Notes under the pieces: generated by a model
Database searches by the model: none
Told to the model about the DNA's origin: nothing
The model's input: only the letters and a program-made list of their open reading frames with translations
Program-made: the position numbers and the translations under genes
Shown here: positions 20,191 to 49,651 of the stretch, one piece after another
How the letters are laid out: each line of letters opens with the position of its first letter
Position numbering within the stretch: position 1 is the stretch's first letter
NCBI GenBank assembly: GCA_965655095.1
Contig: OZ296652.1
Location: forward strand, 28,706,001-28,770,000
Direction of reading: 5' to 3'
Length of the DNA stretch: 64,000 bases
Source of the DNA: Haplodiscus bocki
Taxonomy: Eukaryota

Positions 20191-20439
20191 GTTAATTTAG
20201 CGGGGGTCGAATCCACGAAATCAAAGTAACATCGGGTAAATCCAGTCTCTTTAACCATTAGGTAAAGTCAGAAATTGCGTATTAACGTGAATTACTGAAT
20301 GGAAGAAGTAAGGGGATTGACTCTTTTTAACTGTAGAATGTAAATTGTTTCCAAATTGGAGCTGCTTCCTAATGGTGGAGTGGAATTCAAAGTTCTCCAA
20401 CCGCGTTATTTATTTTGAATTATCTCATCCACTGAGATG

Positions 20440-20830
20440 ACAGTATGCAAACACTTCATGAAAAATTGCCCCTCGGGATAGGATTCAGCCAATGAAAATG
20501 AAACATGCAGACAAATTTTAGTGAGTCACGTGATCAAAAACAAACTTCATGACCAATTATTGTCGAAGTTCATTCACCACGTGTTTTATTTTGAATCATC
20601 TCGTCCGATGAGACTGCGGTACGTAAACTTGGCACCAAAAGTCGCCACCTCGCGGGAGGATTCATCAAGTAAAAATGTAAAGTTTTTATTTTTTGGAGTC
20701 GCGTGTCCAGAATAAACTTCGTGACCAATCAATTTGGAAGTTCACAAGTACCGAATCCAATTAGAAAAAACTGTTCCCTAGTGTTATATAAATCATTCTC
20801 AGTTAAGAAAGATATCATTTCTTCATTCTT
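20440..20830. promoter_or_regulatory. putative bidirectional Maverick promoter
   Basis: Lies between divergent ORFs. Four CCAAT (20489, 20553, 20725, 20757), overlapping TGAGTCA/CACGTG (20522-20532), repeated aaacttc(a/g)tgaccaat, and TATATAAA at 20785 with TCATT about 30 nt downstream. Confidence 0.55.
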
Positions 20831-21499
20831 CATTTCAACTTCAACAGTTTGATTCCCAATTTCAATGATTGAACTTTCCTGGCACTTTACCTCCGATAGC
20901 ATGTGGTTCAGTAGACTTAATTCCTGAATTCTCTCAAATTTGTGCTAGAGACTGTCTCTCTGTAGCGAGCGAACACTGACCCGGAAAACTTGACCCACTT
21001 GAACAATTGATTTTGGAGAAACAGCGATTACTGTGAAGTGGAGAAATGTAAGTACCACTAACTACTTTTCAACTCTAACGATACCAAAAACTGCGTCGTC
21101 AAAATAAGCTTGCCTAGTTACTATTTAGAATTGGTTGGCTGTATTTTAACCGTAACTTTTTATTATTCTCGGATGTTCATACATGCAAAGCTATCATTTT
21201 TCAGATAGCGCTAACAGCAGTAAAACTCCACCTCAGCTTTCCCTTAGCGTGTTTGATACAAACTAGCATTGCAAGAAAACGATTGTTCCGAGAAAAAATT
21301 CAAGCGAGTTTGCCACGATTTAAACAAAAATACCCGAATCACTTCCATTTCCTTCAGGAAATTGAAATTTATTCTACAATCCGAATTAGGTGAAGACTTT
21401 CTAGCACTAACAGATTCAATCTATCTGGGAGACTCGCATTTTGTTTCAAAACATTTCGACATTTTTATAAAACTATGTCAAATTACAAACTAAAAATCA

Positions 21500-24400
21500 G
21501 GATGAAGAACATCTCAAGAATACGAAGAATGTCGAAAATGTCGGAAAACTATTTTGAGGTCGAACAGAGTACGGCAAATGAGGAACCACACAATCTAATG
21601 CTCACATTGTCCATAAAGCTTCAGTAACAAGACCGCATTGAATTTGCAAATCTTCAACAAACATGGAGAACCACTCCCAAAAACAATCCGATGTCCCACA
21701 TTAGAGCATCTTTTTAAAACCCCTTATGAATTATTACAACCTCGTAGAACAGCACACTCCTATCTATCACGAAACCCCGGTCAAAATATTCATCTCTCCG
21801 AGTTTGCGGGTGACGAAAATTTACTTGACAAGTTACGCTTAGTGCAATATTTCCATACTGATGGGAAAATTGAAACTTCGAACAAGATTGTTTACAACTT
21901 TCATTCAACAAGTCGCGATGAAACTTTCATCGAAAAGACCTTTACCGAAGTACCTTCCTCCTGTAAAATCAATTTCACGTTCGGATTCACTTTACAAGAC
22001 TGTTTAACTGCTTGCGAGTATGGATACATTTTGGCAGCTACGAACAATCAATTTTTGATTCCCTGTTTCATTAGCTAACTACGATGACCTCAATTTCATC
22101 AGAAGTCAGTTGGATGGAGAAAGTTTCTCTGAAGGAAATATTGAACAACGACCGAATACAAAGTGGAAATTATTCTATATAACCAATGTTTCTATCTATC
22201 TTCGTATATTTGATACAAAACATGTTTTTGGGTTCTCAGCACCTTAACCTACCACAAACGTTTTTGCGACATGTTGGCACAAAGTCACTCTTGACAAATT
22301 TCAACAAGAAACGTTATCATAATAATCCACGTCTTTCGCGCGCTAGCCCAGGAGATGTTTGGTTCCACTAATCTGAAGGAGAGAACAGAAACACTCTTCC
22401 AGAGTTTCCCCGAAAAAGTGATCAAATAGATGCAAACTTTCCCGGCATCGGTGACAGTCAAGTATACATTCTGGAAGATCTATTAAAGTGTAAAATCCAG
22501 CTGTGCGCAACAGATTCCGACGACGAAGCATCCCTTGTAGCTGGGTTGTCGCGGAGATCCGCAAATTTGTATTCGCGAACTATTTCATTGGTTCAGTACG
22601 ACAATCATATTTGTTGGGTGAGAGATATTGATTCTGTACTGGAAAAGTTTCAATGTAGCAAGTGTGATCATATTTTCTCGAGGCGCAGAATGCTATAGAA
22701 ACACGAAGAGTTTTGGCAAATCAATTTGTCATATTCACCCAAGTGGACATTATTCCCTCTCTCAAACTATTTTTGAACGACTTGAAGAGATGGGTATTCG
22801 TGTATATGAAGAACTGAAACTATTCAACAACATGACTGTATACGACTCCGAAGCGAATGCTTCCCAACAAAACTCAAACTATCAAGACACTGAAAATACT
22901 GAAGGGATCGCGACCCAAATTCCCATCAGTGTTGGACTAAACTCAAACTTTTCAAAGAGCCTGTTTTTCTCTGCAATGAAAATCCAAATTAGTTGAAACA
23001 ATTTGTAAACAAACTTATCATTCTGTCCGCAATAAGCGCAGAGCAAATGAGATCTAAATTCTCAAACCAGTTTTCACTGGTACATCCGGAATCGATGAGC
23101 TACGTGCAGTTACTCCACTCAGAACTAGGGGTAAGTCAGCGTCTTCAGAAAAATTCGTGGCTTCGGAAGCCGTTAAGGAAAGTGAAAATGAACACGAAGA
23201 ACCTGAAATTGTTCAAGTGAAACGAGAACCGTGTAACTTGAAAAGAAAGTAGAAGACCTCGATGACTATTGCTCAACAGTCCCAGATTTTGGTTTCATTA
23301 GTTCGCATTAGGATTTGAATATGATCGAAGAATTCCTACTGAAAAGTTTGCAACTACATTATAATTGTTCTCCGTCTGTAATCTAAGTTTGCAACGTCTA
23401 CAATGGCCGGAAAATCAAAAGAGTACAATTCCCAGACTCTTTATCTTTCCATGGTGGAGCATCTATTCTGCAAAAAGTCTTGGAAGCATTTGGAACGTCG
23501 GATGAGAAAAGTTTTTTCCCATACGAAAGGTTCGACACTCCCACCAAGCTTTAAGAATCATCATTGCCGAACAGTGATCACTTCCACAGTAAATTCAAGA
23601 ACCACAATGTTTTCGAAGTAAAAGTCAAAGCCTTCGAAAAAGTGGAGCTCAATGGATTTAAAAACGCTGAAATATTGACAAAGCTCGGACTGAAAACGAA
23701 ATCAAAAATTTTAATAACTACTTGGAACAACGTTTTTCGGACCAAAAAGGTATGAAATCTTTCCGTGATTTCTTAGAGTGGTACAACTTGAAAGATGTCA
23801 TTCTTACCTTGGAAGCTTTGCGAAATATGGTACAGTTCCATCACAGCAAGAACTTGGATGTTCTCAAATAAAGGTTTACACTTCCCAGTATAGCTAACCG
23901 ACTCCTTCATTCTTCCTATACATCCATCTTCTCTGGTTTTGCGGAAAAAGATAGAGAATACGATTTGTACATCAGAAAGTGCCTTACAAGGGCAGAGCAG
24001 TGAAAAACCATCCCAAAATGCGATGTTCGTTCCAACTTGGAGTACGTTGTTCTCGGATACATGCAATGGACTCATCCTTTACGCAATATTCAAACAATAC
24101 AACAAGAAGCAGAAACGCTTTGGAAATTACCTAGTCGATGGTTATTGTTTTCACAGTACAACTCTTTAGGAAAAGATGGATCGTTGATTCCATTTGCATG
24201 AGTGTTTGGATTATAAAAGAATGCCACTCGGAGAGAGTGAGATCGGACCCCAAAGAAGAAGAAAGGATGACATTAAAAGTTCCTGTCAAGTCTTGGCCTA
24301 AATGTGGAATTATAGGAATGCCAGCGGGGAGAAATATTCAAGGCAATGTAGAGCAGAGTGGACCATATGTCAAAAACGTCCATCCCTACAAGTATCCACT

Positions 24401-25619
24401 TTTGGAAGAACTTCTGCCGAAAATAAAACCAAAAGAAAATTACAGAGTGGTAGACTGTACATTAGAAGTCCCGACAAACTCGAGAGACAATTTCAGAGAG
24501 TTCCCTCCAATTTTCAAAAACATGGAAATTGGACGCGAAGACATCGGTCCATACATGAAAGAGATTGCACAGGAAGATAGACTGTTCGAGAACAAACTGC
24601 GGCGAAAGCTCATTTCTGGCTTTCACCTCTCAAGGAGCCCAATCATTACACTAATTTTCATTTTCTACATTAGAAAGGTTTAGTTGTGAAACAAGTTCAT
24701 TGGGCTCTGGAATATCCACCTGAGCGGTGTTCCAACTACTTTGTGACGTCTGTTCTAGAGGCAAGACGGGAAAGAGATAAGAACAAGGAATCATCAGTGA
24801 TGGCAGAAACTAAGAAGCTGATTGCAAATTCATCTTACGGATACCAAATTATGGATCATTCCAAACACTCAAAAACAAGATATGTCGTGTGATCGGAAAT
24901 CAATCAACACTTGAAAAAAGTATTTCAGTCTTCTGATCAATTTCCCGGAGAGAAATTTGGAGTGAATCTTGCCAAGGAGAAAGTGGAGCACAAAGAACCT
25001 TTAATCGTTGGATTTTTCGTTCTGCAATATGCAAAATTGACAATGTTGGAGCTGTACCACAAACTTTTCGCCCAATTTTGTGATGCGAACAAGTCCGAAC
25101 ATATTGAAATTGATACCGACAGTCTTTACATGAGTCTCGCAGAAACTTCTATCGAAGGTTGTACTAAAGCTGAGATGAAACGTTTTTGGGAATGTTTGCG
25201 ATCGGATGACTGTTCTAATGGACAATATGAAGCTGATCTTTTTTTTATCCGAGAAATTGTTTTTTCACACACTGGCAACATGATGAAAAGCCATCAGGGC
25301 TTTTCAAAGAAGAATTGAAGTTCAGAGAAAATGTGGCGCTCTGGTCAAAGACATATTGCTGTTTCGATGACAAGATAAAGAAAGTGAAACTGAGTTGCAA
25401 GGCAATCATCAGAAAACAGTTCGAGGAACAAAACCCGCTCAATTTGTAAAGGAGAAATCTTTTCACCAGATATCTAGTTGTTTCCATCAACAGAGGATTC
25501 AGAGTAGTGGAGAATATCAAAGTTAACATTCACGAACAGCTAAAGAAAGGAAAATCTTTTTTTATCCTAAACGTGAAGTGTTGAGTCATGGTATCTACAC
25601 ACAACTTCTAGATTTATAG
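21500..25619 (+). pseudogene. protein-primed family B DNA polymerase (pPolB) of Maverick
   Basis: N-terminal C2H2-like fingers (CRKC, CSHC), KINFTFGFTL block, ExoI VYDSE (~22840), ExoII FGFxS..DLNMI (~23290), KSFFPYE, YNLKDV, motif B KKLIANSSYG (~24812), IVGFFVLQYAKLTMLELY, motif C DTDSLY (~25112), GLFKEE, KTYC and C-terminal FYPKREVL..GIYT.LLDL-stop. Many frameshifts and stops. Confidence 0.95.
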
Positions 25620-26059
25620 TTGATGATTCATTTTCATATTAATTCTGTAAGAATTCAACTTAGCATAAAGCACGTTTTCAAAACAAAAGAAAAATGGATA
25701 TTGCAGATAATCGGGAAACTATTGCTAAGCACGTTTTCCTGCACTCATCCATTTTTTTTCAAATTAGGGCAGAAGAGTCGTACGAAAGCTCGGAAGAAAC
25801 ATGTAGATTTACACAATTTGAAGTTTCCTCTTTGCCCAGAGGCTTTCCAAATGATTCGTGTTTAACGAAAACTTCCAACGGAACTCGAAGAATTAATATT
25901 CAAGTGCCTCACCGCGGACATAAGTCCTTCGAGGAAAATTATTCTTCATAAAATCAGCCGCAACAGTTTTGAGATTCGATGTGTCTCATCGCTTCAAAAA
26001 ATCGAGTACAAAGAACTCTTGGATTGCATAAATAGAACAGTCCATTGTCCTGCATTTAT

Positions 26060-26500
26060 CTCCAAATGAGTACTTGAAAATACCACTGGATTTGAAACAG
26101 ATTATTCTGTTGGAAAAAGAATTATCCGAGGAGCCATTATTTGCAAACAATACACACAGAAGGAAAGGATTCGTTGCTGTCGGTTGTTATTCTGATAGAA
26201 AAAAAAGAAATAGACGTGTAATTATTGAACAACTCCACACCTCACGGAGGTTTGATTGGAGTAGGAGATTTTGGTCTTGAAAGTTTTCTGAACTGGAGTA
26301 AGTTTTTTAGACTACATGCCGTTCTCCATGATGCGTGTGGTTTGATGAAAGATCAATTCGTGAAGGGTCCAGGAGATTGCTTTGCTTTACATTCTCAACA
26401 AACCCCTAATACCTTCTATCTAAGGCATTGTACTGGATTATTTTTCGCCTGTCAATAAAGCTTCTTCTCTCCAAACCAATTTGATGAGTTGGAGTTATGA
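26060..26500 (+). pseudogene. Maverick accessory ORF with HD motif (phospholipase A2-like, inferred)
   Basis: GGLIGVG...FRLHAVLHDACG..K...KGPGDC: a Gly-rich loop followed by a helix ending in HD, as in PLA2-type domains. Frameshifted. Confidence 0.45.
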
Positions 26501-26557
26501 GAACAAACCTACTCAATTTCGCTCCTAATTCTTCAACGAAACATTTGGATGTATATC

Positions 26558-26830
26558 ATGGCTGATCAAGGTGATCAAATTTCCGGTGCCGTAAGATCAG
26601 ATGATTCAAATTTTGACTCTAACAAAGAAGAAAGGAGACCGTGGCAAATTTTTGGAGAGACGTCTTGAAGATCACTGTGCCTATTTCTTTTTCAGTGCTT
26701 AGTGGTGATTCCTAAAACTGCATTTTCAGTACTGTTTTTGTCTAGATCGAAAATTTGTGAAGAGAGTACTGGCTGCATTTCAATACTAACCAGTACTGTC
26801 TGGAGTGTTCCCCCATCGCCTCGACCATAG
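26558..26830 (+). pseudogene. small two-TM Maverick ORF upstream of the ATPase
   Basis: MADQG...WQIFGE..RSLCLFLFQCLVVI...VLFLS..K.CEE...ISILTSTV...PSP, with two hydrophobic segments and one internal stop. Confidence 0.5.
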
Positions 26831-26840
26831 TCTCCTAAAA

Positions 26841-27530
26841 ATGAACAAAGTTATTCCCACAGAATAACATTTCTTCATGTCCTTAGTTGGACCAACTGGA
26901 AGTGGAAAAGCGAGGCTTACGCATCAGATGCTCTTGAGAGGAACTTATGCTCCAGTGTTTGATGAAATTATTTACTTTTACCAATATTATCACACTTCTA
27001 TGACAAAATGATAGAAGATGTTCCGAACATCGAGTTCATTAGAGGTGTAGATTTTTATAAGATTAGTCAGCTCGATACTAAAGGGTAAAATATCTTGATT
27101 TTTGATTATGTTTCTGAAGAGTTGTCTACATCCAAAGAGTTCAACAGATTTGCAACAGCTGCACGACATCGGATTTGGAACTGTCTGTACATAAAAGATA
27201 ATTTCTTTCAAAAAAACTCTCAATGGCAGAGATGCCGAACTTCAACTCTCCCACATTGTACTCTTCAAATCGCCAGGAGAAGTACACCAAATTCAGATGC
27301 TGGCAAAAGCAAATATGCTTGGGTAGGCAATTGACGGATTGGTACAAGGATGCGACAGCAGTACCGTTTGGTCTTCTGATAATTGATCTTTATCCTGGAA
27401 CTTCAGACAACCTCCGGTTCTCCACTGACTCGACTTCATTTCCTGCAAAATTCTATCTCCCGAGTAGTAGAGCAAAAACAACTTCTCCAGATGCTAAACG
27501 AAAGGAACTACTATACACTAAAGCTCTTAC
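26841..27530 (+). pseudogene. A32/FtsK-like DNA packaging ATPase
   Basis: ATG at 26841, Walker A LVGPTGSGK, degenerate Walker B LIFD(Y), motif ATAARHR and C-terminal WYKDAT..PFG.LIIDL. Stops and frameshifts present. Confidence 0.92.
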
Positions 27531-27820
27531 TAACTTTCAAAAAGGTCCCCCAGAAAACTTTCCTACAGAATATTCAAAAAATTTCATCAGGTTTCTTTGT
27601 GTGTCTGAGAAATTTGGTGGAAGGTAACATACCAGGTATTCGGCAGAAGCAAGTTACCCATTTCAAAGCAATAATCAAACGAGAACTCTTGAAGAAAAGT
27701 TCACTCCAAGAAAGACGTGTGCAGTTTTCATCCACGAAAAGATTGTCAGTGTTCAATAATATAGGGTTTAGTCTGGTCAAAAAGTTTCGCAGCAAGTTTG
27801 AAATTAACGGAAAACAATAA
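27510..27820 (+). pseudogene. small basic Maverick ORF downstream of the ATPase
   Basis: ...SKNFIRFLC / CLRNLVEGNIP...KKSSLQERR..., at the position of the small conserved ORF that follows Maverick ATPases. Frameshifted. Confidence 0.5.
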
Positions 27821-28279
27821 ATTTGTATGGATTCCAGATCAAATCTGGAAGACTTACAAAGAAGGAGAATCACACTTTCCGATAAAAGTGTCCTCGACCA
27901 CAACGAGTGCGTCAGATCGAACAACTCTCATTTTTTCTGGGGAAGCTGACAAGGAAAAAGAACAACAGAAGAAACATCATCAGATGTTGAATTTTAAACA
28001 CTAAACCAAATCGGACAAAGAGACAATCGTTTCTCTAAAGATCATTCAGGGAAGAAGATACTGGAAAAGTTTTACGAACAAAGCTAATCGCTTCTCACTC
28101 AACAAAACCTTGATTGTTAATGAAACTCACACTCACGTGAAGACATCAAACTCTGTAAGAAACACACAATTGAAAAATGGTTTCTTTAACTAGCAAATTT
28201 ATTCCATGATTGTTAATGTTCTTAGCCTGAATCCGAGTCTGGTTAAGAATCAATATGCCTACGAAAACGAAGCACGCGG

Positions 28280-29200
28280 ATGGACTGATCCTGAGCGAAT
28301 ACGACTCATCAAACTTTATAGGACTGATCCATCAGCATTCGGTTCCATTGAAGCTTTCTTTGGCTGAGAAAAGTGGTAAATCACGACAGAAAAAGGAAAT
28401 TTCCTTGCAGGGGAAAGAAGTCTACCCCAAAAATCATAACAGAACTGAAAAGTTTCTGAGACTACCAGTTAGTGCGAAAGAATGAAATCTGGTACCTGGA
28501 TTTGGCACAAGTCGATGGTCTCGCAGAATAGAAATTTGGTGAGAAATTATTGACGTATTCTCAAGATTGACGTATTCTCAAGATATGTGAGAGTTGAATC
28601 TCTGAAAAGTAAAAACCGAGGAACAAGCAAAGCAGGTTTTTTTAGAATGTGTTCCAGTGACGAAACAGATCTCGTCCTCCCTAAAAAAATTGTGGACAGA
28701 CCGTGGAAAAGAAATTCAGGGGGAATTCAGACGGTTCTGCGATGATGTTGGGGTGAAAGTTTACCATACATTCAGTGACACAAAAGCCTCATTTGCCGAA
28801 AGAGCCATTCGCTCACTGAAAATATTATATCGATTGATTGAGGAGTAACGAAGTGAACGATATTACCTTACCTTCCAGAAAGTGGATACAGTGAACAACC
28901 TTCAAAAGTTACTAATGCTGACTATCTTCAATTTCTTTACAATAATCGCAACAAAAAACGTCTGGAAAAAACTCTGAGGAAAAACAAAAAACCCAAATTT
29001 TCTATTGGAGACCCAGTCAGAATCTCAAAGTCAAACTATGCTTTCAACAAAGGTTACGGTCTCAGTTCACTGACGAACTTTTCATCACCACATGAATAGC
29101 GACCAAAGCTACCGTTGTCACATATCACCTGAAAAATTTGGATGACGAGCGAATTGGTGGAAAATTTTATGAAAACGAGCTCTCAAAATTCATTGGATAA
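28280..29200 (+). pseudogene. Maverick retroviral-like (rve, DDE) integrase, copy 1
   Basis: LY..PSAFGS, EIWYLDL (D), IDVFSRY, LWTDRGKE (D), KASFAERAIRSLK (E), KFSIGDPVRISK and GKFYENEL. Stops and frameshifts. Confidence 0.93.
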
Positions 29201-29684
29201 AAGTGGTGTTTAATCGTTCATTCATCATTTTGCAATTAATTCTTTCACAGTTGAGTTACTCTCCTCTGCATCGAGTGATTTCTACCCGAACAACACAATC
29301 GCTTCTTCCTGCAACTTTCTTCCTGAACAGATTATTTTCGAGGGAGAATGGGAAATTGCATTGACTGAAATTTCTTTTCCATCAAAGATTTACAATGTGA
29401 CACAGGGACAAATTTCTTTCAACGTTCTGAGTTCTCTCTCAGAAGATCATTCAGGGAAGAAGATACTGGAAAAGTTTTACAAACAAAGCTAATCGCTTCT
29501 CACTCAACAAAACCTTGATTGTTAATGAAACTCACACTCACGTGAAGACATCAAACTCTGTAAGAAACACACAATTGAAAAATGGTTTCTTTAACTAGCA
29601 AATTTATTCCATGATTGTTAATGTTCTTAGCCTGAATCCGAGTCTGGTTAAGAATCAATATGCCTACGAAAACGAAGCACGCGG

Positions 29685-30605
29685 ATGGACTGATCCTGAG
29701 CGAATACGACTCATCAAACTTTATAGGACTGATCCATCAGCATTCGGTTCCATTGAAGCTTTCTTTGGCTGAGAAAAGTGGTAAATCACGACAGAAAAAG
29801 GAAATTTCCTTGCAGGGGAAAGAAGTCTACCCCAAAAATCATAACAGAACTGAAAAGTTTCTGAGACTACCAGTTAGTGCGAAAGAATGAAATCTGGTAC
29901 CTGGATTTGGCACAAGTCGATGGTCTCGCAGAATAGAAATTTGGTGAGAAATTATTGACGTATTCTCAAGATTGACGTATTCTCAAGATATGTGAGAGTT
30001 GAATCTCTGAAAAGTAAAAACCGAGGAACAAGCAAAGCAGGTTTTTTTAGAATGTGTTCCAGTGACGAAACATATCTCGTCCTCCCTAAAAAAATTGTGG
30101 ACAGACCGTGGAAAAGAAATTCAGGGGGAATTCAGACGGTTCTGCGATGATGTTGGGGTGAAAGTTTACCATACATTCAGTGACACAAAAGCCTCATTTG
30201 CCGAAAGAGCCATTCGCTCACTGAAAATATTATATCGATTGATTGAGGAGTAACGAAGTGAACGATATTACCTTACCTTCCAGAAAGTGGATACAGTGAA
30301 CAACCTTCAAAAGTTACTAATGCTGACTATCTTCAATTTCTTTACAATAATCGCAACAAAAAACGTCTGGAAAAAACTCTGAGGAAAAACAAAAAACCCA
30401 AATTTTCTATTGGAGACCCAGTCAGAATCTCAAAGTCAAACTATGCTTTCAACAAAGGTTACGGTCTCAGTTCACTGACGAACTTTTCATCACCACATGA
30501 ATAGCGACCAAAGCTACCGTTGTCACATATCACCTGAAAAATTTGGATGACGAGCGAATTGGTGGAAAATTTTATGAAAACGAGCTCTCAAAATTCATTG
30601 GATAA
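29685..30605 (+). pseudogene. Maverick integrase, copy 2
   Basis: Same motifs and lesions as copy 1. Confidence 0.93.
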
Positions 30606-31089
30606 AAGTGGTGTTTAATCGTTCATTCATCATTTTGCAATTAATTCTTTCACAGTTGAGTTACTCTCCTCTGCATCGAGTGATTTCTACCCGAACAACA
30701 CAATCGCTTCTTCCTGCAACTTTCTTCCTGAACAGATTATTTTCGAGGGAGAATGGGAAATTGCATTGACTGAAATTTCTTTTCCATCAAAGATTTACAA
30801 TGTGACACAGGGACAAATTTCTTTCAACGTTCTGAGTTCTCTCTCAGAAGATCATTCAGGGAAGAAGATACTGGAAAAGTTTTACGAACAAAGCTAATCG
30901 CTTCTCACTCAACAAAACCTTGATTGTTAATGAAACTCACACTCACGTGAAGACATCAAACTCTGTAAGAAACACACAATTGAAAAATGGTTTCTTTAAC
31001 TAGCAAATTTATTCCATGATTGTTAATGTTCTTAGCCTGAATCCGAGTCTGGTTAAGAATCAATATGCCTACGAAAACGAAGCACGCGG

Positions 31090-32044
31090 ATGGACTGATC
31101 CTGAGCGAATACGACTCATCAAACTTTATAGGACTGGTCCATCAGCATTCGGTTCCATTGAAGCTTTCTTTGGCTGAGAAAAGTGGTAAATCACGACAGA
31201 AAGTTGAACTTTCCTTGCAGGGGAAAGAAGTCTACCCCAAAAATCATAACAGAACTAAAAAGTTTCTGAGACTACCAGTTAGTGCGAAAGATAAGAATGA
31301 AATCTGGTACCTGGATTTGGCACAAGTCGATGGTCTCGCAGAATAGAAATTTGGTGAAAAATTATTGACGTATTCTCAAGATTGACGTATTCTCAAGATA
31401 TGTGAGAGTTGAATCTCTGAAAAGTAAAAACCGAGGAACAAGCAAAGCAGGTTTTTTTAGAATGTGTTCCAGTGACGAAACAGATCTCGTCCTCCCTAAA
31501 AAAATTGTGGACAGACCGTGGAAAAGAAATTCAGGGGGAATTCAGACGGTTCTGCGATGATGTTGGGGTGAAAGTTTACCATACATTCAGTGACACAAAA
31601 GCCTCATTTGCCGAAAGAGCCATTCGCTCACTGAAAATATTATATCGATTGATTGAGGAGTAACAAAGTGAACGATATTACCTTACCTTCCAGAAAGTGG
31701 ATACAGTGAACAACAAAGTAAACTCAGCCTTTAACCTACAACCTTCAAAAGTTACTAATGCTGACTATCTTCAATTTCTTTACAATAATCGCAACAAAAA
31801 ACGTCTGGAAAAAACTCTGAGGAAAAACAAAAAACCCAAATTTTCTATTGGAGACCCAGTCAGAATCTCAAAGTCAAACTATGCTTTCAACAAAGGTTAC
31901 GGTCTCAGTTCACTGACGAACTTTTCATCATTAACATGAATAGCGACCAAAGCTACCGTTGTCACATATCACCTGAAAAATTTGGATGACGAGCGAATTG
32001 GTGGAAAATTTTATGAAAACGAGCTCTCAAAATTCATTGGATAA
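31090..32044 (+). pseudogene. Maverick integrase, copy 3 (least deleted)
   Basis: Retains the 5-bp, 28-bp and 1-bp segments missing in copies 1-2 but still carries the shared stops. Confidence 0.93.
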
Positions 32045-32528
32045 AAGTGGTGTTTAATCGTTCATTCATCATTTTGCAATTAATTCTTTCACAGTTGAGT
32101 TACTCTCCTCTGCATCGAGTGATTTCTACCCGAACAACACAATCGCTTCTTCCTGCAACTTTCTTCCTGAACAGATTATTTTCGAGGGAGAATGGGAAAT
32201 TGCATTGACTGAAATTTCTTTTCCATCAAAGATTTACAATGTGACACAGGGACAAATTTCTTTCAACGTTCTGAGTTCTCTCTCAGAAGATCATTCAGGG
32301 AAGAAGATACTGGAAAAGTTTTACGAACAAAGCTAATCGCTTCTCACTCAACAAAACCTTGATTGTTAATGAAACTCACACTCACGTGAAGACATCAAAC
32401 TCTGTAAGAAACACACAATTGAAAAATGGTTTCTTTAACTAGCAAATTTATTCCATGATTGTTAATGTTCTTAGCCTGAATCCGAGTCTGGTTAAGAATC
32501 AATATGCCTACGAAAACGAAGCACGCGG

Positions 32529-33483
32529 ATGGACTGATCCTGAGCGAATACGACTCATCAAACTTTATAGGACTGGTCCATCAGCATTCGGTTCCATTGA
32601 AGCTTTCTTTGGCTGAGAAAAGTGGTAAATCACGACAGAAAGTTGAACTTTCCTTGCAGGGGAAAGAAGTCTACCCCAAAAATCATAACAGAACTAAAAA
32701 GTTTCTGAGACTACCAGTTAGTGCGAAAGATAAGAATGAAATCCGGTACCTGGATTTGGCACGAGTCGATGGTCTCGCAGAATAAAAATTTGGTGAAAAA
32801 TTATTGACGTATTCTCAAGATTGACGTATTCTCAAGATATGTGAGAGTTGAATCTCTGAAAAGTAAAAACCGAGGAACAAGCAAAGCAGGTTTTTTTAGA
32901 ATGTGTTCCAGTGACGAAACATATCTCGTCCTCCCTAAAAAAATTGTGGACAGACCGTGGAAAAGAAATTCAGGGGGAATTCAGACGGTTCTGCGATGAT
33001 GTTGGGGTGAAAGTTTACCATACATTCAGTGACACAAAAGCCTCATTTGCCGAAAGAGCCATTCGCTCACTGAAAATATTATATCGATTGATTGAGGAGT
33101 AACAAAGTGAACGATATTACCTTACCTTCCAGAAAGTGGATACAGTGAACAACAAAGTAAACTCAGCCTTTAACCTACAACCTTCAAAAGTTACTAATGC
33201 TGACTATCTTCAATTTCTTTACAATAATCGCAACAAAAAACGTCTGGAAAAAACTCTGAGGAAAAACAAAAAACCCAAATTTTCTATTGGAGACCCAGTC
33301 AGAATCTCAAAGTCAAACTATGCTTTCAACAAAGGTTACGGTCTCAGTTCACTGACGAACTTTTCATCATTAACATGAATAGCGACCAAAGCTACCGTTG
33401 TCACATATCACCTGAAAAATTTGGATGACGAGCGAATTGGTGGAAAATTTTATGAAAACGAGCTCTCAAAATTCATTGGATAA
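32529..33483 (+). pseudogene. Maverick integrase, copy 4
   Basis: As copy 3 with W>R, Q>R and Q>H variants. Confidence 0.93.
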
Positions 33484-33967
33484 AAGTGGTGTTTAATCGT
33501 TCATTCATCATTTTGCAATTAATTCTTTCACAGTTGAGTTACTCTCCTCTGCATCGAGTGATTTCTACCCGAACAACACAATCGCTTCTTCCTGCAACTT
33601 TCTTCCTGAACAGATTATTTTCGAGGGAGAATGGGAAATTGCATTGACTGAAATTTCTTTTCCATCAAAGATTTACAATGTGACACAGGGACAAATTTCT
33701 TTCAACGTTCTGAGTTCTCTCTCAGAAGATCATTCAGGGAAGAAGATACTGGAAAAGTTTTACGAACAAAGCTAATCGCTTCTCACTCAACAAAACCTTG
33801 ATTGTTAATGAAACTCACACTCACGTGAAGACATCAAACTCTGTAAGAAACACACAATTGAAAAATGGTTTCTTTAACTAGCAAATTTATTCCATGATTG
33901 TTAATGTTCTTAGCCTGAATCCGAGTCTGGTTAAGAATCAATATGCCTACGAAAACGAAGCACGCGG

Positions 33968-34922
33968 ATGGACTGATCCTGAGCGAATACGACTCATCAA
34001 ACTTTATAGGACTGGTCCATCAGCATTCGGTTCCATTGAAGCTTTCTTTGGCTGAGAAAAGTGGTAAATCACGACAGAAAGTTGAACTTTCCTTGCAGGG
34101 GAAAGAAGTCTACCCCAAAAATCATAACAGAACTAAAAAGTTTCTGAGACTACCAGTTAGTGCGAAAGATAAGAATGAAATCCGGTACCTGGATTTGGCA
34201 CAAGTCGATGGTCTCGCAGAATAAAAATTTGGTGAAAAATTATTGACGTATTCTCAAGATTGACGTATTCTCAAGATATGTGAGATTTGAATCTCTGAAA
34301 AGTAAAAACCGAGGAACAAGCAAAGCAGGTTTTTTTAGAATGTGTTCCAGTGACGAAACAGATCTCGTCCTCCCTAAAAAAATTGTGGACAGACCGTGGA
34401 AAAGAAATTCAGGGGGAATTCAGACGGTTCTGCGATGATGTTGGGGTGAAAGTTTACCATACATTCAGTGACACAAAAGCCTCATTTGCCGAAAGAGCCA
34501 TTCGCTCACTGAAAATATTATATCGATTGATTGAGGAGTAACAAAGTGAACGATATTACCTTACCTTCCAGAAAGTGGATACAGTGAACAACAAAGTAAA
34601 CTCAGCCTTTAACCTACAACCTTCAAAAGTTACTAATGCTGACTATCTTCAATTTCTTTACAATAATCGCAACAAAAAACGTCTGGAAAAAACTCTGAGG
34701 AAAAACAAAAAACCCAAATTTTCTATTGGAGACCCAGTCAGAATCTCAAAGTCAAACTATGCTTTCAACAAAGGTTACGGTCTCAGTTCACTGACGAACT
34801 TTTCATCATTAACATGAATAGCGACCAAAGCTACCGTTGTCACATATCACCTGAAAAATTTGGATGACGAGCGAATTGGTGGAAAATTTTATGAAAACGA
34901 GCTCTCAAAATTCATTGGATAA
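33968..34922 (+). pseudogene. Maverick integrase, copy 5
   Basis: As copy 3 with the W>R variant. Confidence 0.93.
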
Positions 34923-35406
34923 AAGTGGTGTTTAATCGTTCATTCATCATTTTGCAATTAATTCTTTCACAGTTGAGTTACTCTCCTCTGCATCGAGTGA
35001 TTTCTACCCGAACAACACAATCGCTTCTTCCTGCAACTTTCTTCCTGAACAGATTATTTTCGAGGGAGAATGGGAAATTGCATTGACTGAAATTTCTTTT
35101 CCATCAAAGATTTACAATGTGACACAGGGACAAATTTCTTTCAACGTTCTGAGTTCTCTCTCAGAAGATCATTCAGGGAAGAAGATACTGGAAAAGTTTT
35201 ACGAACAAAGCTAATCGCTTCTCACTCAACAAAACCTTGATTGTTAATGAAACTCACACTCACGTGAAGACATCAAACTCTGTAAGAAACACACAATTGA
35301 AAAATGGTTTCTTTAACTAGCAAATTTATTCCATGATTGTTAATGTTCTTAGCCTGAATCCGAGTCTGGTTAAGAATCAATATGCCTACGAAAACGAAGC
35401 ACGCGG

Positions 35407-36333
35407 ATGGACTGATCCTGAGCGAATACGACTCATCAAACTTTATAGGACTGGTCCATCAGCATTCGGTTCCATTGAAGCTTTCTTTGGCTGAGAAAAG
35501 TGGTAAATCACGACAGAAAGTTGAACTTTCCTTGCAGGGGAAAGAAGTCTACCCCAAAAATCATAACAGAACTAAAAAGTTTCTGAGACTACCAGTTAGT
35601 GCGAAAGATAAGAATGAAATCCGGTACCTGGATTTGGCACAAGTCGATGGTCTCGCAGAATAGAAATTTGGTGAAAAATTATTGACGTATTCTCAAGATT
35701 GACGTATTCTCAAGATATGTGAGAGTTGAATCTCTGAAAAGTAAAAACCGAGGAACAAGCAAAGCAGGTTTTTTTAGAATGTGTTCCAGTGACGAAACAG
35801 ATCTCGTCCTCCCTAAAAAAATTGTGGACAGACCGTGGAAAAGAAATTCAGGGGGAATTCAGACGGTTCTGCGATGATGTTGGGGTGAAAGTTTACCATA
35901 CATTCAGTGACACAAAAGCCTCATTTGCCGAAAGAGCCATTCGCTCACTGAAAATATTATATCGATTGATTGAGGAGTAACAAAGTGAACGATATTACCT
36001 TACCTTCCAGAAAGTGGATACAGTGAACAACCTTCAAAAGTTACTAATGCTGACTATCTTCAATTTCTTTACAATATTCGCAACAAAAAACGTCTGGAAA
36101 AAACTCTGAGGAAAAACAAAAAACCCAAATTTTCTATTGGAGACCCAGTCAGAATCTCAAAGTCAAACTATGCTTTCAACAAAGGTTACGGTCTCAGTTC
36201 ACTGACGAACTTTTCATCATTAACATGAATAGCGACCAAAGCTACCGTTGTCACATATCACCTGAAAAATTTGGATGACGAGCGAATTGGTGGAAAATTT
36301 TATGAAAACGAGCTCTCAAAATTCATTGGATAA
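35407..36333 (+). pseudogene. Maverick integrase, copy 6
   Basis: Long-type 5' markers but carries the 28-bp deletion of copies 1-2. Confidence 0.93.
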
Positions 36334-36364
36334 AAGTGGTGTTTAATCGTTCATTCATCATTTT

Positions 36365-37170
36365 GCAATTAATTCTTTCACAGTTGAGTTACTCTCCTCT
36401 GCATCGAGTGATTTCTACCCGAACAACACAATCGCTTCTTCCTGCAACTTTCTTCCTGAACAGATTATTTTCGAGGGAGAATGGGAAATTGCATTGACTG
36501 AAATTTCTTTTCCATCAAAGATTTACAATGTGACACAGGGACAAATTTCTTTCAACGTTCTGAGTTCTCTCTCAGACCAATATTCTGATTTTTTATCTCA
36601 TTCAACCCGGCTACTATAAGAGTATCGATTTGATCATTAAAACAATGTTGGAGAAAATCTTCGAACATCCAAGCTATAAAAAGTATTCGAACAAAACTGC
36701 CAGCTTGATTTCCTGCACAGTGGATCCTGTTACTCAACGAACTGACATCAAAACAATGACGGAAAACGCGAGTGTTTAACTCGCTAGCGAAGATCTGCAA
36801 CATATCTTTGGTTTTCTTCCTAGTCAATTCGAAGTCGAAGATCACAAAACACATGGCTTCAGCCCACCATCGCATGACATTGATCGATTTCATTCAGTTT
36901 TAGTTTACAACGATTCACCTATAGTTCAATAGTTGGAGACATGAAAGCTCCAATTCTCTGTTTCAATAAGTAGCGATCCGTAAGCACAACAATGATATCA
37001 AAAACCTTCAAACACGTCGAGTTTCGGAAACAGTTTAAGCGTTCTCTGCATTCTATTACAGTTGAATTGAGATCTTCCAACGGAGAATTGATCCCCTTCT
37101 TTCCAGTTGGTTATTCTCGTTTGAACCTAATGTTCCGAAAAAATCTCAATCCATCATTCATTTGAAAAAC
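36365..37170 (+). pseudogene. minor capsid (penton) protein
   Basis: N-terminal SFTVELLSSASSDFYPNNTIAS..NFLPEQI..EGEWEIALTEISFP, later IVGDMKAPIL and SITVELRSSNGELIPF...LNLMFRK. Only the last array unit continues into the rest of the gene. Confidence 0.85.
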
Positions 37171-37180
37171 ATACTAGAGA

Positions 37181-37600
37181 ATGGAATGCTCACAGACAGC
37201 TCCATACTGTAGAGGAATCCCAAGACAACGAGGTCGAGGACTCGGGCCATTGACTGGAACAATTGCACGTACCGCTCTTTCAATATTACGGAAATATCTT
37301 TTACCAGCTGTTAAACGAATAGGACGAGATGCCCTAGAGTCCGCAATTCTGAAAATGGGAAAAGTGCTGTCGGGAAAATCTTCAACAAAAAAACTGTAAA
37401 AACAACAGCATCATCTACTTTCAAAAAGTAATATGGTGGAAGCGATGAAACGAACAGAAAAGAAGAAAATCGAAGAGAACTTCAGAGAAAACCATTGCGC
37501 AAAAAGGAAAAGCGCAACGTACCCGGGAACATCTCTTCAAAAAACATGAGAAATAAAATGTCGATTACAAAACCAGCTGCACGCTCATCGCAAGAAATTT
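37181..37600 (+). pseudogene. small basic Maverick ORF with QRGRGLG motif (putative core/membrane-active virion protein)
   Basis: RQRGRGLG followed by an amphipathic stretch (TIARTALSILRKYLLPAVKRIG) and a K/R-rich tail. Lies between the minor and major capsid genes. Confidence 0.65.
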
Positions 37601-38795
37601 TTGATAAAATCCTTATTTTAGAACCAATCGATTGGTTCAATACTCTCCAAACATTCGCAACTAACTCAGCCAACGAATAAAGTACTGACTTTTTGCTGGA
37701 AACATCAGAATGTTCTTCTTGACCTCGATGAGAATTACCTTCATCTCAAAATGAAAGCGACAAAAGATGCCAACGTTCCAGAAGGAACTGATGATGTGTA
37801 TCTAGTCAACAACTCTCTGGATTCTCTTTTTTCTAATTGCGAAGTGTTTTACAACAATGAACAAGTCTGTACTTCCAACAGCTTATATCCACACAAAGCT
37901 TTTATACCGACAGAGTTTCGAATCAGCAAAGGAACTAGGGGGTTTTTGGGCTTCTGTCACGATTACTCTTAGGAAAAAGATCGCAAAGATTTGAGCAAAC
38001 AACCATCTGATAGTAAGTAATTAGCTCTGGAAAAGTGAGTTTCTCTGGGAAAATGGTTGCTGGTGCTATTACTTGTGAAAAGTTCCTTCTACCTAATGTC
38101 TCCATAAGAATTCGTTTGGTTCGATCGCGACCCAAGTTTTACATCATTGCAGGGGATGATACAATCCAATATCGGGCTACAAACACAGAAGCTCCACTCT
38201 TAACTGGACAAGTCGCTATCAATGACAACGCGTTGAAGTTCATTCAAAATTCTGTTCAACATCAACCAGCCAGATACATATTTTCTTGAACGCTTTCAAA
38301 AACTTTCACTATACCAAAAGGATAAAACCAGTGTAACCGGGAGAATACTTTCAATATTGCACTCGTCAGGAGGATCGCAATTGCAATGAATTCAAATTCG
38401 GAATTTCTTGGAACAATGAATAGTAATTCTATCCATTACCAGAAGTTTGGATTGAGGGAAATCAAATTAGTGACGGGAAATCTAATCATTCTCAGTATGA
38501 AGAAAAGTGATAACAAAGGAGCTATGTTACTACAATGAAAACGCTCAAATGTCATGAATTTGGACCTGATATTTCTTTGACTGATTATCCAGACCAGTTG
38601 GTACAGGTCTTTGATTTGAATTCCACGCAGGAAGTAAACATTCAGATGCACTACCCAGATATTATGGCGGCTTGTTTGAGATTTGAATTGTATTTTGAAA
38701 AACAACTAGACAATACTGTCGAGGTGATCATTCTCGGGGAAAGATTGTCTGCAGTTCACATTGACAAAACAGGAAAGGTGTCAAAACATGGATAG
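37590..38795 (+). pseudogene. major capsid protein (double jelly-roll)
   Basis: DLDENYLHLK, VNNSLDSLFSNCEVFYN, LYPHKAFI, FLLPNVSIRIRLVRS, RRIAIAMN, YQKFGLREI, VFDLNS and LRFELYFEKQL...VIILGE. Frameshifted. Confidence 0.88.
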
Positions 38796-39190
38796 TGAAC
38801 AAAATATCAAACGAAATATACACAAGCTCAAAACTCTGAAGCACAAATTTATTGAAACGTCCCCGGCAAATTTTACACCCCTTCCATTACCCAAAAATTC
38901 CTTCTGTTTCGCCGTCAATGCTGATCGCCATGACCTAACAGGTTCTATTGGTTGCTGTCGGCTAGAAAAATGGACGAGTGTTTTCGGTGACTCATTGGGG
39001 CAAAGACTGCGGAACTACAAATCTTTGACGTTCAAAGCGTCAGGAGTCAGCAAGATGGTGACAAAAAAGCTGCAGAAAAATCCATTGTGTGCTTTGTACT
39101 ATATTTATTTCGCTGATGTAGTCAAAATGATGATATTAGGTCTATAAATGATACATTTATATTACTAATTTTTGCTGAGTATCTATATTT
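38788..39190 (+). pseudogene. adenain/Ulp1-like cysteine maturation protease
   Basis: ATG overlaps the MCP stop. VN....G.(H)W site is frameshifted; FGDSLG and LQ...CALY.IYF are present. Confidence 0.85.
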
Positions 39191-40138
39191 CATGTGTTTC
39201 CCTACTATGACTTTTTTAACTGTAGTAAAAGTTTTGTTAGTTCGAGAAGAATATTCTTTTAGTTTCCATGAATCTTGAGAAGCAATACCCGGTTACCACA
39301 AAAATATTCCTGATTTTTTTCCTCACACTTCTTTTCTCTATCTGAGTGGAAGTTTCGGATGTTTTTTTTCATTCAACAAGATTGGCTGTGTTAGTGCCAG
39401 TGAAAATGAACAAAGAACTGGACTGAATAAAATGTTAAGAACAACAGGAAACGTCACGGTATCTGTCACTTGATGCCATTCGACAATAATACTTATATTA
39501 TTAGGGAAGTCCGACAATTCTGAACAAAAAACGAAATTAGTTATTGTGGACTTAATCTAGGAAACTAATAACGCCGCTCTTCGACAAACTTTTCCAAAGT
39601 ATCAGGGTCCGTAATAATTACTGCCGGTTGGTAGATGAACAAGATTCGTAAAGCAACAAAATGAAAAACCTGGGAAAATACCGAAAATTGGGTGCTATCT
39701 AATGGAAGAAACTTCGCGGTTCTTTTCCCTTCAAATAAGAGAAAATGCGAAATGTATACGTTGGTTTTAATTTAAGCGAATTATGGCAAAAAAGTGGTTT
39801 TGTTGATTTTATGGAAAGTAGCAAAAATTCGAGCGCAAATGGCAAATTTAGCGACTTTTGGTTAATTTTTGATAAGGAAACAGCAAAGTTTCCAAAAGCT
39901 ACGCGTTGTACGACTTCATAGTTTTTTATGATGATCAATTATCAGGTAGCCCTCTACCGACTGTTCGTAGATCTACAGCCTAAATTTCAGCTAGAGTTGA
40001 AATCGTTCAGCTGGGCAAAAGTATCTTCTTTAGTCATCTGAGAAAAAAGTCAATGTAGTCGCTATGATATCTTCCGCCTTCGGCTTCGATAATAAAAATT
40101 CCCCAGCGCACTGAGGGGTGGAATTCATGAATTAAAAC

Positions 40139-47300: not shown

Positions 47301-47686
47301 GAAACATTGATTGCTCGTTGAAAGTGTTTCTTTCAGGCGTATATGCCATACTCTTTTGGACTTACCTCACGAGATGACTCAGATCGACGATTCTGACTGT
47401 GCCATGTTTGTTTCTCAACATTGCTCAGCCAACATCAAAGCGTCTGCACAGGGCTGAAAATTCAAGAAAAGACTTTCACGAAATCAGGTGGAGGCTACAG
47501 CAATAAATGTAGGTGAAGCGCGGGACAAAATTTTTCAAGCGCTCGACTGGCGTAATTTTGATTGAATCAAGTCATTGGAATGCAGATTTGCTCAATTGAT
47601 GTCCGTCTGAAAACATTACAAATTTATGGCAATTGAAAAACTGCAAATTACGCCCAATTGTGAAAACAGAGATGTTGAACGTTAAT
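41312..47686 (+). repeat. left arm of large inverted duplication
   Basis: Reverse-complement match to 57588->51406 and, for its inner end, to 49651->48896. Mirrored ORF pairs appear in the track (41613/57100, 41891/56822, 46307/52501). Confidence 0.97.
43960..45070 (+). repeat. cryptic degenerate ~150-bp tandem repeat (mirrored in the right arm)
   Basis: Core aaa...t(g/t)tCTGAAAATGC...tttgca recurs at 43976, 44125, 44286, 44439, 44585, 44727, 44881 and 45037 (mean spacing ~152). Confidence 0.65.
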
Positions 47687-48895: not shown

Positions 48896-49651
48896 ATTAA
48901 CGTTCAACATCTCTGTTTTCACAGTTGGGCGTAATTTGCAGTTTTTCAATTGCCATAAATTTGTAATGTTTTCAGACAGACATCAATTGAGCAAAACTTC
49001 ATTCCAATGGATTGATTCAATCAAAATTACGCCGGTCGAGCGCTTGAAAAATTTGTCCCGCGCTTCACCTACGTTTATTGCTGGAGCCTCCACTTGTTTT
49101 CGTGAAAGTCTTTTCTTGAATTTTCATTGTGAGCCTTGTGCAGACGTCTTGATGTTGGCTGAGCAATGTTGAGAAACAAACATGGCACAGTCACAATCGT
49201 CAATATGAGTCATCTCGTGAGGTAAGTCCGAAAAAGTGTGGCATTTTTGCCTGAAATAAACACTTTCAACGAGCAATCGCTGTTTCCGAATTTGGTTTGT
49301 TGCCAAATTTTTCCCACAGAATAGAAACCATGATTTCGAGAAAAATTGACATTGAAATGCAAATACTTTTAAGGAACCTCGATCATTTGGAGTGAAGGAC
49401 ACTTTTGTAGGCTCAAGCACTTATGCCTGACTGTCTACTTAGTTTGAAGCAACGAAATGGTCTCGGACTGAAAGCAAGAAACAGTGTTTCAATCTCAGTA
49501 GGGCGTATTAGATAGCCGGCATGAGAAGATCCCTTTTGACCGGAGATTTGACATTTGGCTCGGTGAAAAAGTATCTGCTCATATTGTTTCTGCCTAGTTG
49601 TAAAACTATCAGGCATGAATCGAAAGTAACTGAAAAAGAGAACCAGCGACT
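48896..49651 (-). repeat. additional inner copy of the right arm, ending at the gap
   Basis: Inverted match to ~46940-47686. 48972-49651 is a near-exact direct duplicate of 51406-52086 (one 1-bp indel seen). Confidence 0.95.

What the first reader, a model, noticed from the sequence alone, without database searches (positions are those of the whole stretch)
28038..36576. A dead viral integrase cassette amplified into a six-unit macrosatellite
Seen: six head-to-tail ~1.4-kb units, each spanning one whole integrase plus short flanks, with one identical junction formed between similar ttctct..aga stretches. All units share the same inactivating lesions (stop after GLAE, stop after LIEE, a 17-bp duplication attgacgtattctcaag x2, frameshifts). 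Amplification therefore happened long after the gene died and is very recent relative to the decay of the element. Inference: birth of a satellite from a provirus through one duplication or circle re-integration followed by unequal exchange. Selection for integrase protein is excluded; selection for RNA is possible.
Basis: partly seen in the sequence, partly recalled or inferred. Interest (0 to 1): 0.75.

Follow-up and report, generated by a model that had tools for sequence, protein, structure and literature searches.

The report
Tandem copies of a dead virus-like integrase
A 1.4-kb piece of a long-dead Maverick/Polinton-type virus-like element, holding a broken integrase gene, was copied head to tail six times in an invertebrate-like genome; it looks like an ordinary by-product of DNA repair and unequal exchange, not a working gene.

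Summary
Window 28032-36576 is a head-to-tail array of six units (1405, 1405, 1439, 1439, 1439 and 1411 nt) with five identical internal junctions. Each unit holds one nearly full-length relic of an rve (DDE) integrase, plus 237 nt upstream and 245 nt downstream. The downstream flank is the start of the next gene. The gene therefore died before it was amplified.

The integrase is not retroviral. There are no LTRs, no reverse transcriptase and no N-terminal His/Cys motif. Its closest viral fold match is a MELD (adintovirus/polinton group) integrase. The flanks carry decayed polymerase-B-like and P-loop ATPase relics on the same strand. The host element is best read as a dead Maverick/Polinton/adintovirus-like endogenous element.

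The founding junction used 1 nt of exact overlap, so it was a non-homologous event. The units form two subfamilies about 1% apart, with about 0.2-0.3% divergence within each. That fits one duplication followed by later unequal exchange.

I found no sign of RNA structure or function. With six copies at one locus, this is a local tandem amplification, not a demonstrated satellite. It is a known kind of event, of low to moderate interest.

The parts
28032..36576 (+). Whole tandem array: six head-to-tail units plus a 7-nt phase overlap at the right end
28032..29436 (+). Unit 1 (1405 nt), subfamily A
29437..30841 (+). Unit 2 (1405 nt), subfamily A; 4 substitutions from unit 1
30842..32280 (+). Unit 3 (1439 nt), subfamily B
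32281..33719 (+). Unit 4 (1439 nt), subfamily B
33720..35158 (+). Unit 5 (1439 nt), subfamily B
35159..36576 (+). Unit 6 (1411 nt plus the 7-nt overlap). Subfamily B at all diagnostic substitutions, but it lacks the same 28 nt as units 1 and 2
28269..29191 (+). Integrase (rve/DDE) relic of unit 1, broken: 6 frameshifts and 3 stops
   Evidence: counts and outer bounds only
29674..30596 (+). Integrase relic of unit 2, broken: 6 frameshifts and 3 stops
31079..32035 (+). Integrase relic of unit 3, broken: 3-5 frameshifts and 2-3 stops, depending on the reference relative
32518..33474 (+). Integrase relic of unit 4, broken: 3-5 frameshifts and 2-3 stops. One of its open pieces was the query that found 208 relatives
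33957..34913 (+). Integrase relic of unit 5, broken: 3-5 frameshifts and 2-3 stops
35396..36324 (+). Integrase relic of unit 6, broken: 4-6 frameshifts and 2-3 stops
36356..38800 (+). Next gene of the element (function unknown), broken. Its first ~75 codons are the downstream flank repeated in every unit, and only the last copy continues into the right flank. The downstream end is approximate
   Evidence: relatives P0023, P0138 and P0006 run from the integrase C-terminus into the same sequence; no family hit
26841..27350 (+). Decayed P-loop NTPase relic (Walker A, Walker-B-like stretch) upstream of the array; bounds approximate
   Evidence: P0131 N-terminus matches; no family-level hit
24650..25350 (+). 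Decayed family-B DNA-polymerase-like stretch (motif B/C region); bounds approximate, and the gene probably extends further upstream
   Evidence: PF03175, E 0.0031, below cutoff; motif reading; three unannotated relatives
38700..39150 (+). Possible adenain/Ulp1-like protease relic. Recognised from memory of motifs only, not confirmed by any tool
   Evidence: negative
21100..39500 (+). Approximate span of the host virus-like element, judged from the excess of plus-strand open stretches. Ends not defined (no terminal repeats found)

Best explanation
The array is a local tandem amplification of an internal 1.4-kb segment of a long-dead endogenous Maverick/Polinton/adintovirus-like element, on the plus strand between about 21 and 39.5 kb. 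The segment holds the element's rve integrase pseudogene, the 237 nt before it and the first 245 nt after it, which are the start of the next gene.

Shown: six units and one junction type. The integrase relic was already multiply broken before the first duplication. The founding junction has only 1 nt of exact overlap. There are two unit subfamilies, laid out as A A B B B B.

Inferred: (1) a single non-homologous event (end joining or replication template switching) duplicated the segment in place. (2) The two copies diverged by about 1%. (3) Unequal homologous exchange or replication slippage between copies then raised the number to six, leaving the identical junction in every unit and the youngest, most alike units in the middle. 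(4) The 28-nt loss shared by the edge units and unit 6 arose either twice at a 5-nt direct repeat or by a short conversion tract.

The array makes no integrase and shows no sign of a structured RNA. It is most likely a neutral by-product.
For: Array and junctions.

Integrase identity: an 80-aa open piece finds 208 relatives at E<=1e-3 (best 1.3e-16, 53% identity). Eight of ten long relatives carry Pfam rve above the cutoff. Relatives align nearly end to end in each unit. The family has a near-invariant D, D, E triad and matches retroviral-type integrase cores in the PDB (E 7e-13).

Element class: the top viral fold match is a MELD-virus integrase (E 3e-20, 25% identity), with the mavirus rve integrase at rank 9. 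MELD/adintovirus/Polinton elements are defined by PolB plus a retrovirus-like integrase, usually with an FtsK-like ATPase and adenain (PMC8502044, PMC4028283, PMC5499653). PF03175 scores E 0.0031 on an upstream piece. A Walker A/B relic lies between it and the integrase, and relative P0131 joins such an N-terminus to an integrase core. Three relatives show the same integrase-then-next-gene order.

Two-step history: A versus B differ by 12-16 substitutions plus 34 nt of indels; within a subfamily the difference is 2-4 substitutions.

The differences look like real mutations: 12 transitions to 7 transversions, and the larger indels are not in homopolymers.
Against: Only the integrase is firmly identified. 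The PolB hit is below Pfam's cutoff and, after about 60 pieces scanned, is only suggestive. The ATPase is identified at motif level only. The protease reading rests on memory, and tools gave nothing. No capsid gene was recognised. No terminal inverted repeats were found.

The divergence pattern could also arise from a single burst followed by local homogenisation. Copy number cannot be checked against reads. Neutrality is inferred from the absence of signals, not demonstrated.
Confidence: 0.7

Rival explanations
1. Circle origin. The 1.4-kb segment was excised as an extrachromosomal circle by joining of the two breakpoints, copied by rolling-circle replication into a multimer, and put back at the parent locus by homologous recombination.
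For: There is one junction type in all units, and the array is in register with both flanks. This is what a re-integrated multimer would also give.
Against: A single burst predicts roughly equal divergence among all units. Observed are two tiers (about 1% against 0.2-0.3%) with the subfamilies in blocks. No other copy of the junction lies in the window outside the array. The model needs more steps than duplication plus unequal exchange.
Confidence: 0.12
2. Assembly artefact. The true locus has fewer (or more) units, and the assembler mis-stated the copy number.
For: Copy number in near-identical kb-scale repeats is a classic assembly weakness. The same window has an N gap at 49652-49851 with a 99.85% identical duplicate on its two sides, so this assembly is not flawless here.
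Against: The units are not identical. There are 20 variable substitution columns and three indels, arranged in an ordered A A B B B B pattern, with private changes in five of the six units. Their spectrum looks like mutation. The array lies inside continuous sequence, 13 kb from the gap.
Confidence: 0.1
3. Selected non-coding function. The array was amplified or kept because its transcripts, for example small RNAs against active relatives of the element, benefit the host.
For: Endogenous viral elements in arthropods are reported as sources of small RNAs (abstract of PMC10675110). Amplification would raise the dose. Nothing in this window supports it directly.
Against: There is no Rfam match. 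Folding energy is no better than shuffles (z +0.57 and +1.28). Units accumulate deletions freely. No expression data are available.
Confidence: 0.05
4. Retroviral origin. The cassette is the integrase end of the pol gene of an endogenous retrovirus or LTR retrotransposon.
For: The catalytic core is homologous to retroviral and Ty3 integrase cores.
Against: There is no LTR pair. No RT, RNase H, protease or gag family was found in more than 30 flanking pieces. Relatives are stand-alone proteins of 317-345 aa with no conserved N-terminal His/Cys. The best viral fold match is a MELD-virus integrase at 25% identity, against 12-18% for retroviral Pol. The upstream relics are PolB-like and P-loop ATPase-like.
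Confidence: 0.03

Closest known systems
Endogenized, degraded Maverick/Polinton/adintovirus elements of animals (PMC8502044, PMC4028283, PMC9683012)
   Same: It has a stand-alone rve integrase whose closest viral fold match is a MELD-virus integrase. PolB-like and P-loop ATPase-like relics lie on the same strand within about 12 kb of unique sequence. The genes are riddled with stops and frameshifts, as described for endogenized copies.
   Different: No terminal inverted repeats, capsid genes or protease could be confirmed here. An internal segment has been amplified six-fold, and the polinton/adintovirus papers I searched did not describe that (the hits were screened by title and abstract only).
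Tandem repeats and satellite DNAs derived from segments of transposable elements (review PMC12628747)
   Same: A head-to-tail array has arisen from an internal, formerly coding segment of a mobile element. The review lists arrays from gag or pol segments of LTR retrotransposons and from central parts of DNA transposons, and it invokes microhomology and unequal exchange.
   Different: There are only six copies at one locus, with a 1.4-kb unit. No evidence of spread, homogenisation across loci or chromosomal role is available. The source is a virus-like Polinton-type element, which that review does not mention.
Retroviral and LTR-retrotransposon integrases (PFV, RSV, HTLV, Ty3)
   Same: It has the DD(35)E catalytic core fold, with a small beta-rich C-terminal domain in the model.
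   Different: It has no HHCC N-terminal domain, is not part of a Pol polyprotein, has no LTRs or RT nearby, and shares only 12-18% identity in fold alignments.
Macrosatellites with gene-derived units (for example the D4Z4 type; from general knowledge)
   Same: The unit is kb-scale and carries a gene-derived sequence, repeated head to tail.
   Different: Macrosatellites usually have tens of copies, are polymorphic, and in some cases keep an open reading frame. Here there are six copies, the gene is dead in all of them, and polymorphism is unknown.

Membership tests
Maverick/Polinton/adintovirus-like element | Retrovirus-like (rve) integrase gene | tested here: met
   A relic is present in every unit, identified through relatives that pass Pfam rve. 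The window's own piece alone is sub-threshold (E 0.018).
Maverick/Polinton/adintovirus-like element | [quoted passage not shown] | tested here: inconclusive
   PF03175 scores E 0.0031 (16.9 bits against a cutoff of 25.8) on one piece, at the expected part of the profile. The next piece has a motif-C-like stretch and three unannotated relatives. PDB, PHROGs and a structure model gave nothing.
Maverick/Polinton/adintovirus-like element | FtsK/HerA-type packaging ATPase | tested here: inconclusive
   Walker A and a Walker-B-like stretch are seen, and the N-terminus of P0131 matches. No family-level hit was found.
Maverick/Polinton/adintovirus-like element | Adenain-type cysteine protease | tested here: inconclusive
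   There is only a motif resemblance recalled from memory in one 139-aa piece. Pfam, PDB and PHROGs were negative.
Maverick/Polinton/adintovirus-like element | Double and single jelly-roll capsid genes | tested here: inconclusive
   No family hit was found in any downstream piece. The pieces are short and decayed, so absence is weak evidence.
Maverick/Polinton/adintovirus-like element | Terminal inverted repeats bounding a 10-20 kb element | tested here: not met
   There is no inverted pair between the flanks beyond chance-level 20-30-nt matches. The ends may be decayed or truncated. The unique length, about 11-12 kb without the extra units, is compatible.
Endogenous retrovirus / LTR retrotransposon | Pair of long terminal repeats | tested here: not met
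   Self-comparison of the window finds none around the region.
Endogenous retrovirus / LTR retrotransposon | Reverse transcriptase and RNase H directly upstream of the integrase | tested here: not met
   No such family was found in the upstream pieces, even at E up to 10.
Endogenous retrovirus / LTR retrotransposon | HHCC zinc-binding N-terminal domain of the integrase | tested here: not met
   No column N-terminal of the first catalytic Asp has His or Cys in at least half of 20 relatives.
Satellite / macrosatellite DNA | Head-to-tail tandem units of kb size | tested here: met
Satellite / macrosatellite DNA | High or variable copy number, presence in populations or at several loci | not testable with these tools
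   Only this window is available. Within it, the junction occurs only inside the array.

The most novel reading that the evidence does not exclude
The amplification is not neutral. A dead piece of an endogenous adintovirus/Polinton-like element was multiplied because its transcripts feed a small-RNA pathway that restrains active relatives of the element, so that copy number works as a dose control for a heritable antiviral memory.
Probability: 0.05. Interest if true: 0.7.

Novelty: new member of a known kind. Interest (0 to 1): 0.27.

Why it matters
This is a clean, datable example of how a tandem array starts. The founding breakpoint is preserved, with 1 nt of overlap, and the two-tier divergence shows a duplication followed by later growth through unequal exchange. 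The shared lesions prove that the cargo was already dead. That makes it a useful teaching case for the early life of repeats derived from mobile elements. It also appears to add Polinton/adintovirus-type endogenous elements to the known sources of such arrays. It does not open a new mechanism or a new class of element, and nothing suggests a function.

Tried and rejected
- Pfam on about 60 single-frame pieces. Nothing passed the cutoff inside the element; only rve (E 0.018) and PF03175 (E 0.0031) came close.
- Word-index protein search on two pieces of the unit region: blank. Its length window excludes full-length relatives.
- Word-index search on the polymerase-like piece: three unannotated fragments only.
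- PDB sequence search with the integrase core piece, the polymerase-like piece and the protease-like piece: nothing.
- PHROGs: nothing useful.
- Structure model of the polymerase-like piece: pLDDT 43. I discarded it and ran no fold search on it.
- Search for LTRs or terminal inverted repeats: none.
- Rfam, tRNA scan and RNA folding of a unit: nothing.
- Bacterial-type promoter scan: 28 sites against 22 expected, and irrelevant for a eukaryote.
- Literature search for my memory lead 'F54H12.3': one unrelated paper. That name stays an untested recollection.
- Retroviral origin: considered and rejected (see rival explanations).
- Human origin of the contig: considered and rejected. CpG observed/expected is 0.90, and the window has almost no interspersed repeat pairs.
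Full report
**Observation**

Repeat finding and self-BLAST define a head-to-tail array at 28032-36576 with six units of 1405, 1405, 1439, 1439, 1439 and 1411 nt. The array begins at unit phase 348 and ends at phase 354. The five internal junctions are identical over 60 nt. The junction 17-mer occurs five times in the window, only there, against none expected.

**Anatomy of a unit**

Intact relatives of 317-345 aa align from about residue 6-13 to 310-322 inside every unit. Each unit therefore holds a nearly full-length integrase relic of 923-957 nt, 237 nt of upstream sequence and 245 nt of downstream sequence. The downstream part is the start of a second gene. Three natural relatives (P0023, P0138, P0006) run from the integrase C-terminus straight into sequence matching it, so this gene order belongs to the element family. 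Only the last copy of that gene start continues into the right flank. At the internal junctions it is joined to the sequence that precedes the integrase.

**What the protein is**

No open piece of the unit passes any Pfam cutoff. The best score is rve at E 0.018. The word-index search was blank, so I spent the one exhaustive search on an 80-aa single-frame core piece.
- It found 208 relatives at E<=1e-3, the best at 1.3e-16 and 53% identity.
- Eight of ten longer relatives carry Pfam rve above the cutoff.
- An alignment of 20 relatives has a near-invariant Asp, Asp, Glu triad with 33 residues between the last two. Its profile matches retroviral-type integrase cores in the PDB at E 7e-13 to 1e-5.
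- A model of relative P0003 (pLDDT 80.7) finds a MELD-virus integrase as its best viral fold match (E 3e-20, 25% identity, similar length). The mavirus virophage rve integrase is at rank 9, and retroviral Pol proteins match at 12-18% identity. In the PDB it matches foamy-virus and RSV intasome integrases.
- The relatives have no conserved His/Cys N-terminal of the first catalytic Asp.

MELD stands for midsize eukaryotic linear dsDNA viruses. The animal-tropic adintoviruses, Polintons and Mavericks are defined by a PolB plus a retrovirus-like integrase (PMC8502044, PMC5499653).

**State of the gene**

I used a frameshift-aware alignment that kept only scores, counts and outer bounds. Against three relatives it gives the following:
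- Units 3-5: 3-5 frameshifts and 2-3 stops.
- Units 1-2: 6 frameshifts and 3 stops.
- Unit 6: 4-6 frameshifts and 2-3 stops.

All length differences between units lie inside the relic, and the longer units align better to relatives. The 34 nt missing from units 1-2 and the 28 nt missing from unit 6 are therefore later deletions. The gene was dead before the first duplication, and selection for integrase protein is excluded.

As a rough inference from general mutation spectra: two shared stops and at least three shared frameshifts in about 950 nt imply several percent of neutral divergence since inactivation. That is roughly an order of magnitude more than the ~0.5% per lineage separating the two unit subfamilies.

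**Host element**

There is no LTR pair and no RT, RNase H, gag or retroviral protease in the flanking pieces. Plus-strand open stretches are in excess from about 21 to 39.5 kb.
- Upstream on the same strand, one piece scores PF03175 (organellar and viral PolB) at E 0.0031, below the cutoff, at the motif-B part of the profile. The next piece carries a motif-C-like stretch and has three unannotated relatives.
- Between that region and the array lies a P-loop NTPase relic with Walker A and a Walker-B-like stretch. Relative P0131 joins a matching N-terminus to an integrase core.
- A downstream piece reminded me of an adenain-type protease, but no tool supports that.
- No capsid gene and no terminal inverted repeats were recognised.

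I read the host as a dead Maverick/Polinton/adintovirus-like endogenous element with a confidence of about 0.8. Only the integrase is firm.

**Host genome**

The window has a CpG observed/expected ratio of 0.90 and almost no interspersed repeat pairs. I therefore do not take it for human or any vertebrate; it looks invertebrate. A DUF1759 domain, known to me from Pao/BEL-type retrotransposons, lies at about 11 kb.

**History of the array**

The founding junction shares 1 nt of exact overlap between the two parental breakpoints, inside a weak 7-of-9 similarity. The first event was therefore non-homologous: end joining or template switching.

The units fall into two blocks. Units 1-2 differ from each other by 4 substitutions. 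Units 3-6 differ among themselves by 2-4. The two blocks differ by 12-16 substitutions plus 34 nt of indels. This fits one early duplication followed, after about 1% divergence, by expansion of both copies through unequal homologous exchange or slippage. That process carries the same junction into every new unit.

Unit 6 is type B at all diagnostic substitutions but lacks the same 28 nt as units 1-2. That segment is bordered by a 5-nt direct repeat, and the nearest diagnostic sites are 45 and 194 nt away. Recurrent slippage and a short conversion tract are both possible.

The variable sites show 12 transitions to 7 transversions, and the 5- and 28-nt indels are not in homopolymers. This argues for real mutations over assembly noise. 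A rolling-circle or re-integration origin is not excluded, but it predicts equal divergence among the units.

**Function**

Rfam finds nothing in the window. The two halves of a unit fold no better than shuffled controls (z +0.57 and +1.28). I see no evidence for a selected RNA. The array is most simply a neutral by-product.

**Comparison and novelty**

Tandem arrays born from internal, formerly coding parts of mobile elements are well documented, and microhomology and unequal exchange are the usual explanations (review PMC12628747). That review does not mention Polintons or Mavericks. A literature search for Polinton/Maverick together with satellite or tandem duplication listed 10 of 30 hits, none about this judging by title and abstract. 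This is a new member of a known kind. Calling it a macrosatellite or a satellite at birth goes beyond six copies at one locus.

I did not fetch DNA around relatives (contig look-ups, pattern or protein scans of the viral, metagenome or genome collections). This cost me the gene context of relatives.

I did not read the integrase through its breaks or join frames. All queries were single open pieces or natural relatives.

To give pieces by reference, my scripts printed bounds of open stretches in all frames and three-frame translations with stop marks, as the translate tool also does. One search lists the 17-nt duplications. Three notebook entries carry a few piece references. These show where frames close, although I drew up no list of the breaks of a gene. 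I flag it here and have deleted nothing.

Searches were input slips, which I corrected and resent.

Noticed in passing
window 41312-47610 (+) and 57588-51406 (-): A large inverted duplication with arms of about 6.3 kb. The outer 1.9 kb are 98.3% identical and the inner 4.4 kb are 93.6% identical. It starts about 4.7 kb to the right of the array. Whether this region is generally prone to rearrangement is open.
   Followed up: partly
window 48972-49651 and 51406-52086, around the N run 49652-49851: The 680 nt just left of the 200-N gap are 99.85% identical to a stretch 1.7 kb right of it. In addition, 46937-47686 is an inverted copy of 48896-49651 (92.9%). This may be an assembly overlap at a scaffold join. 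I did not touch the gap.
   Followed up: no
window about 11040-11408, minus strand: An open piece with Pfam DUF1759 above the cutoff (E 3e-7, 30.9 bits). I know this domain from gag-like proteins of Pao/BEL-type retrotransposons, so it is probably a relic of another mobile element.
   Followed up: no
window about 2775-3257, plus strand: A sub-threshold Pfam hit to P8_CR, the 'minor capsid protein P8 central region' (E 0.0021, 18.5 bits against a cutoff of 26.9). It could be chance or a second virus-derived relic.
   Followed up: no
whole window: CpG observed/expected is 0.90 at 38% G+C, so there is no vertebrate-type CpG depletion. G+C rises to 0.43-0.44 in the last 4 kb (60-64 kb).
   Followed up: partly
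window 46053-46363 (mirrored at 52660-52970), 43142-43326 and 20387-20744: Small local tandem duplications: about 156 nt twice at 74% identity, 90 nt twice at 94%, and about 180 nt twice at 69%. Small tandem duplications are frequent in this stretch of genome.
   Followed up: no
relatives P0131, P0138, P0023 and P0006 (protein collection): Several database 'proteins' of this family are gene calls that fuse an integrase core with the start of the neighbouring gene or with a P-loop N-terminus. That suggests many public copies are themselves decayed or mis-called.
   Followed up: partly
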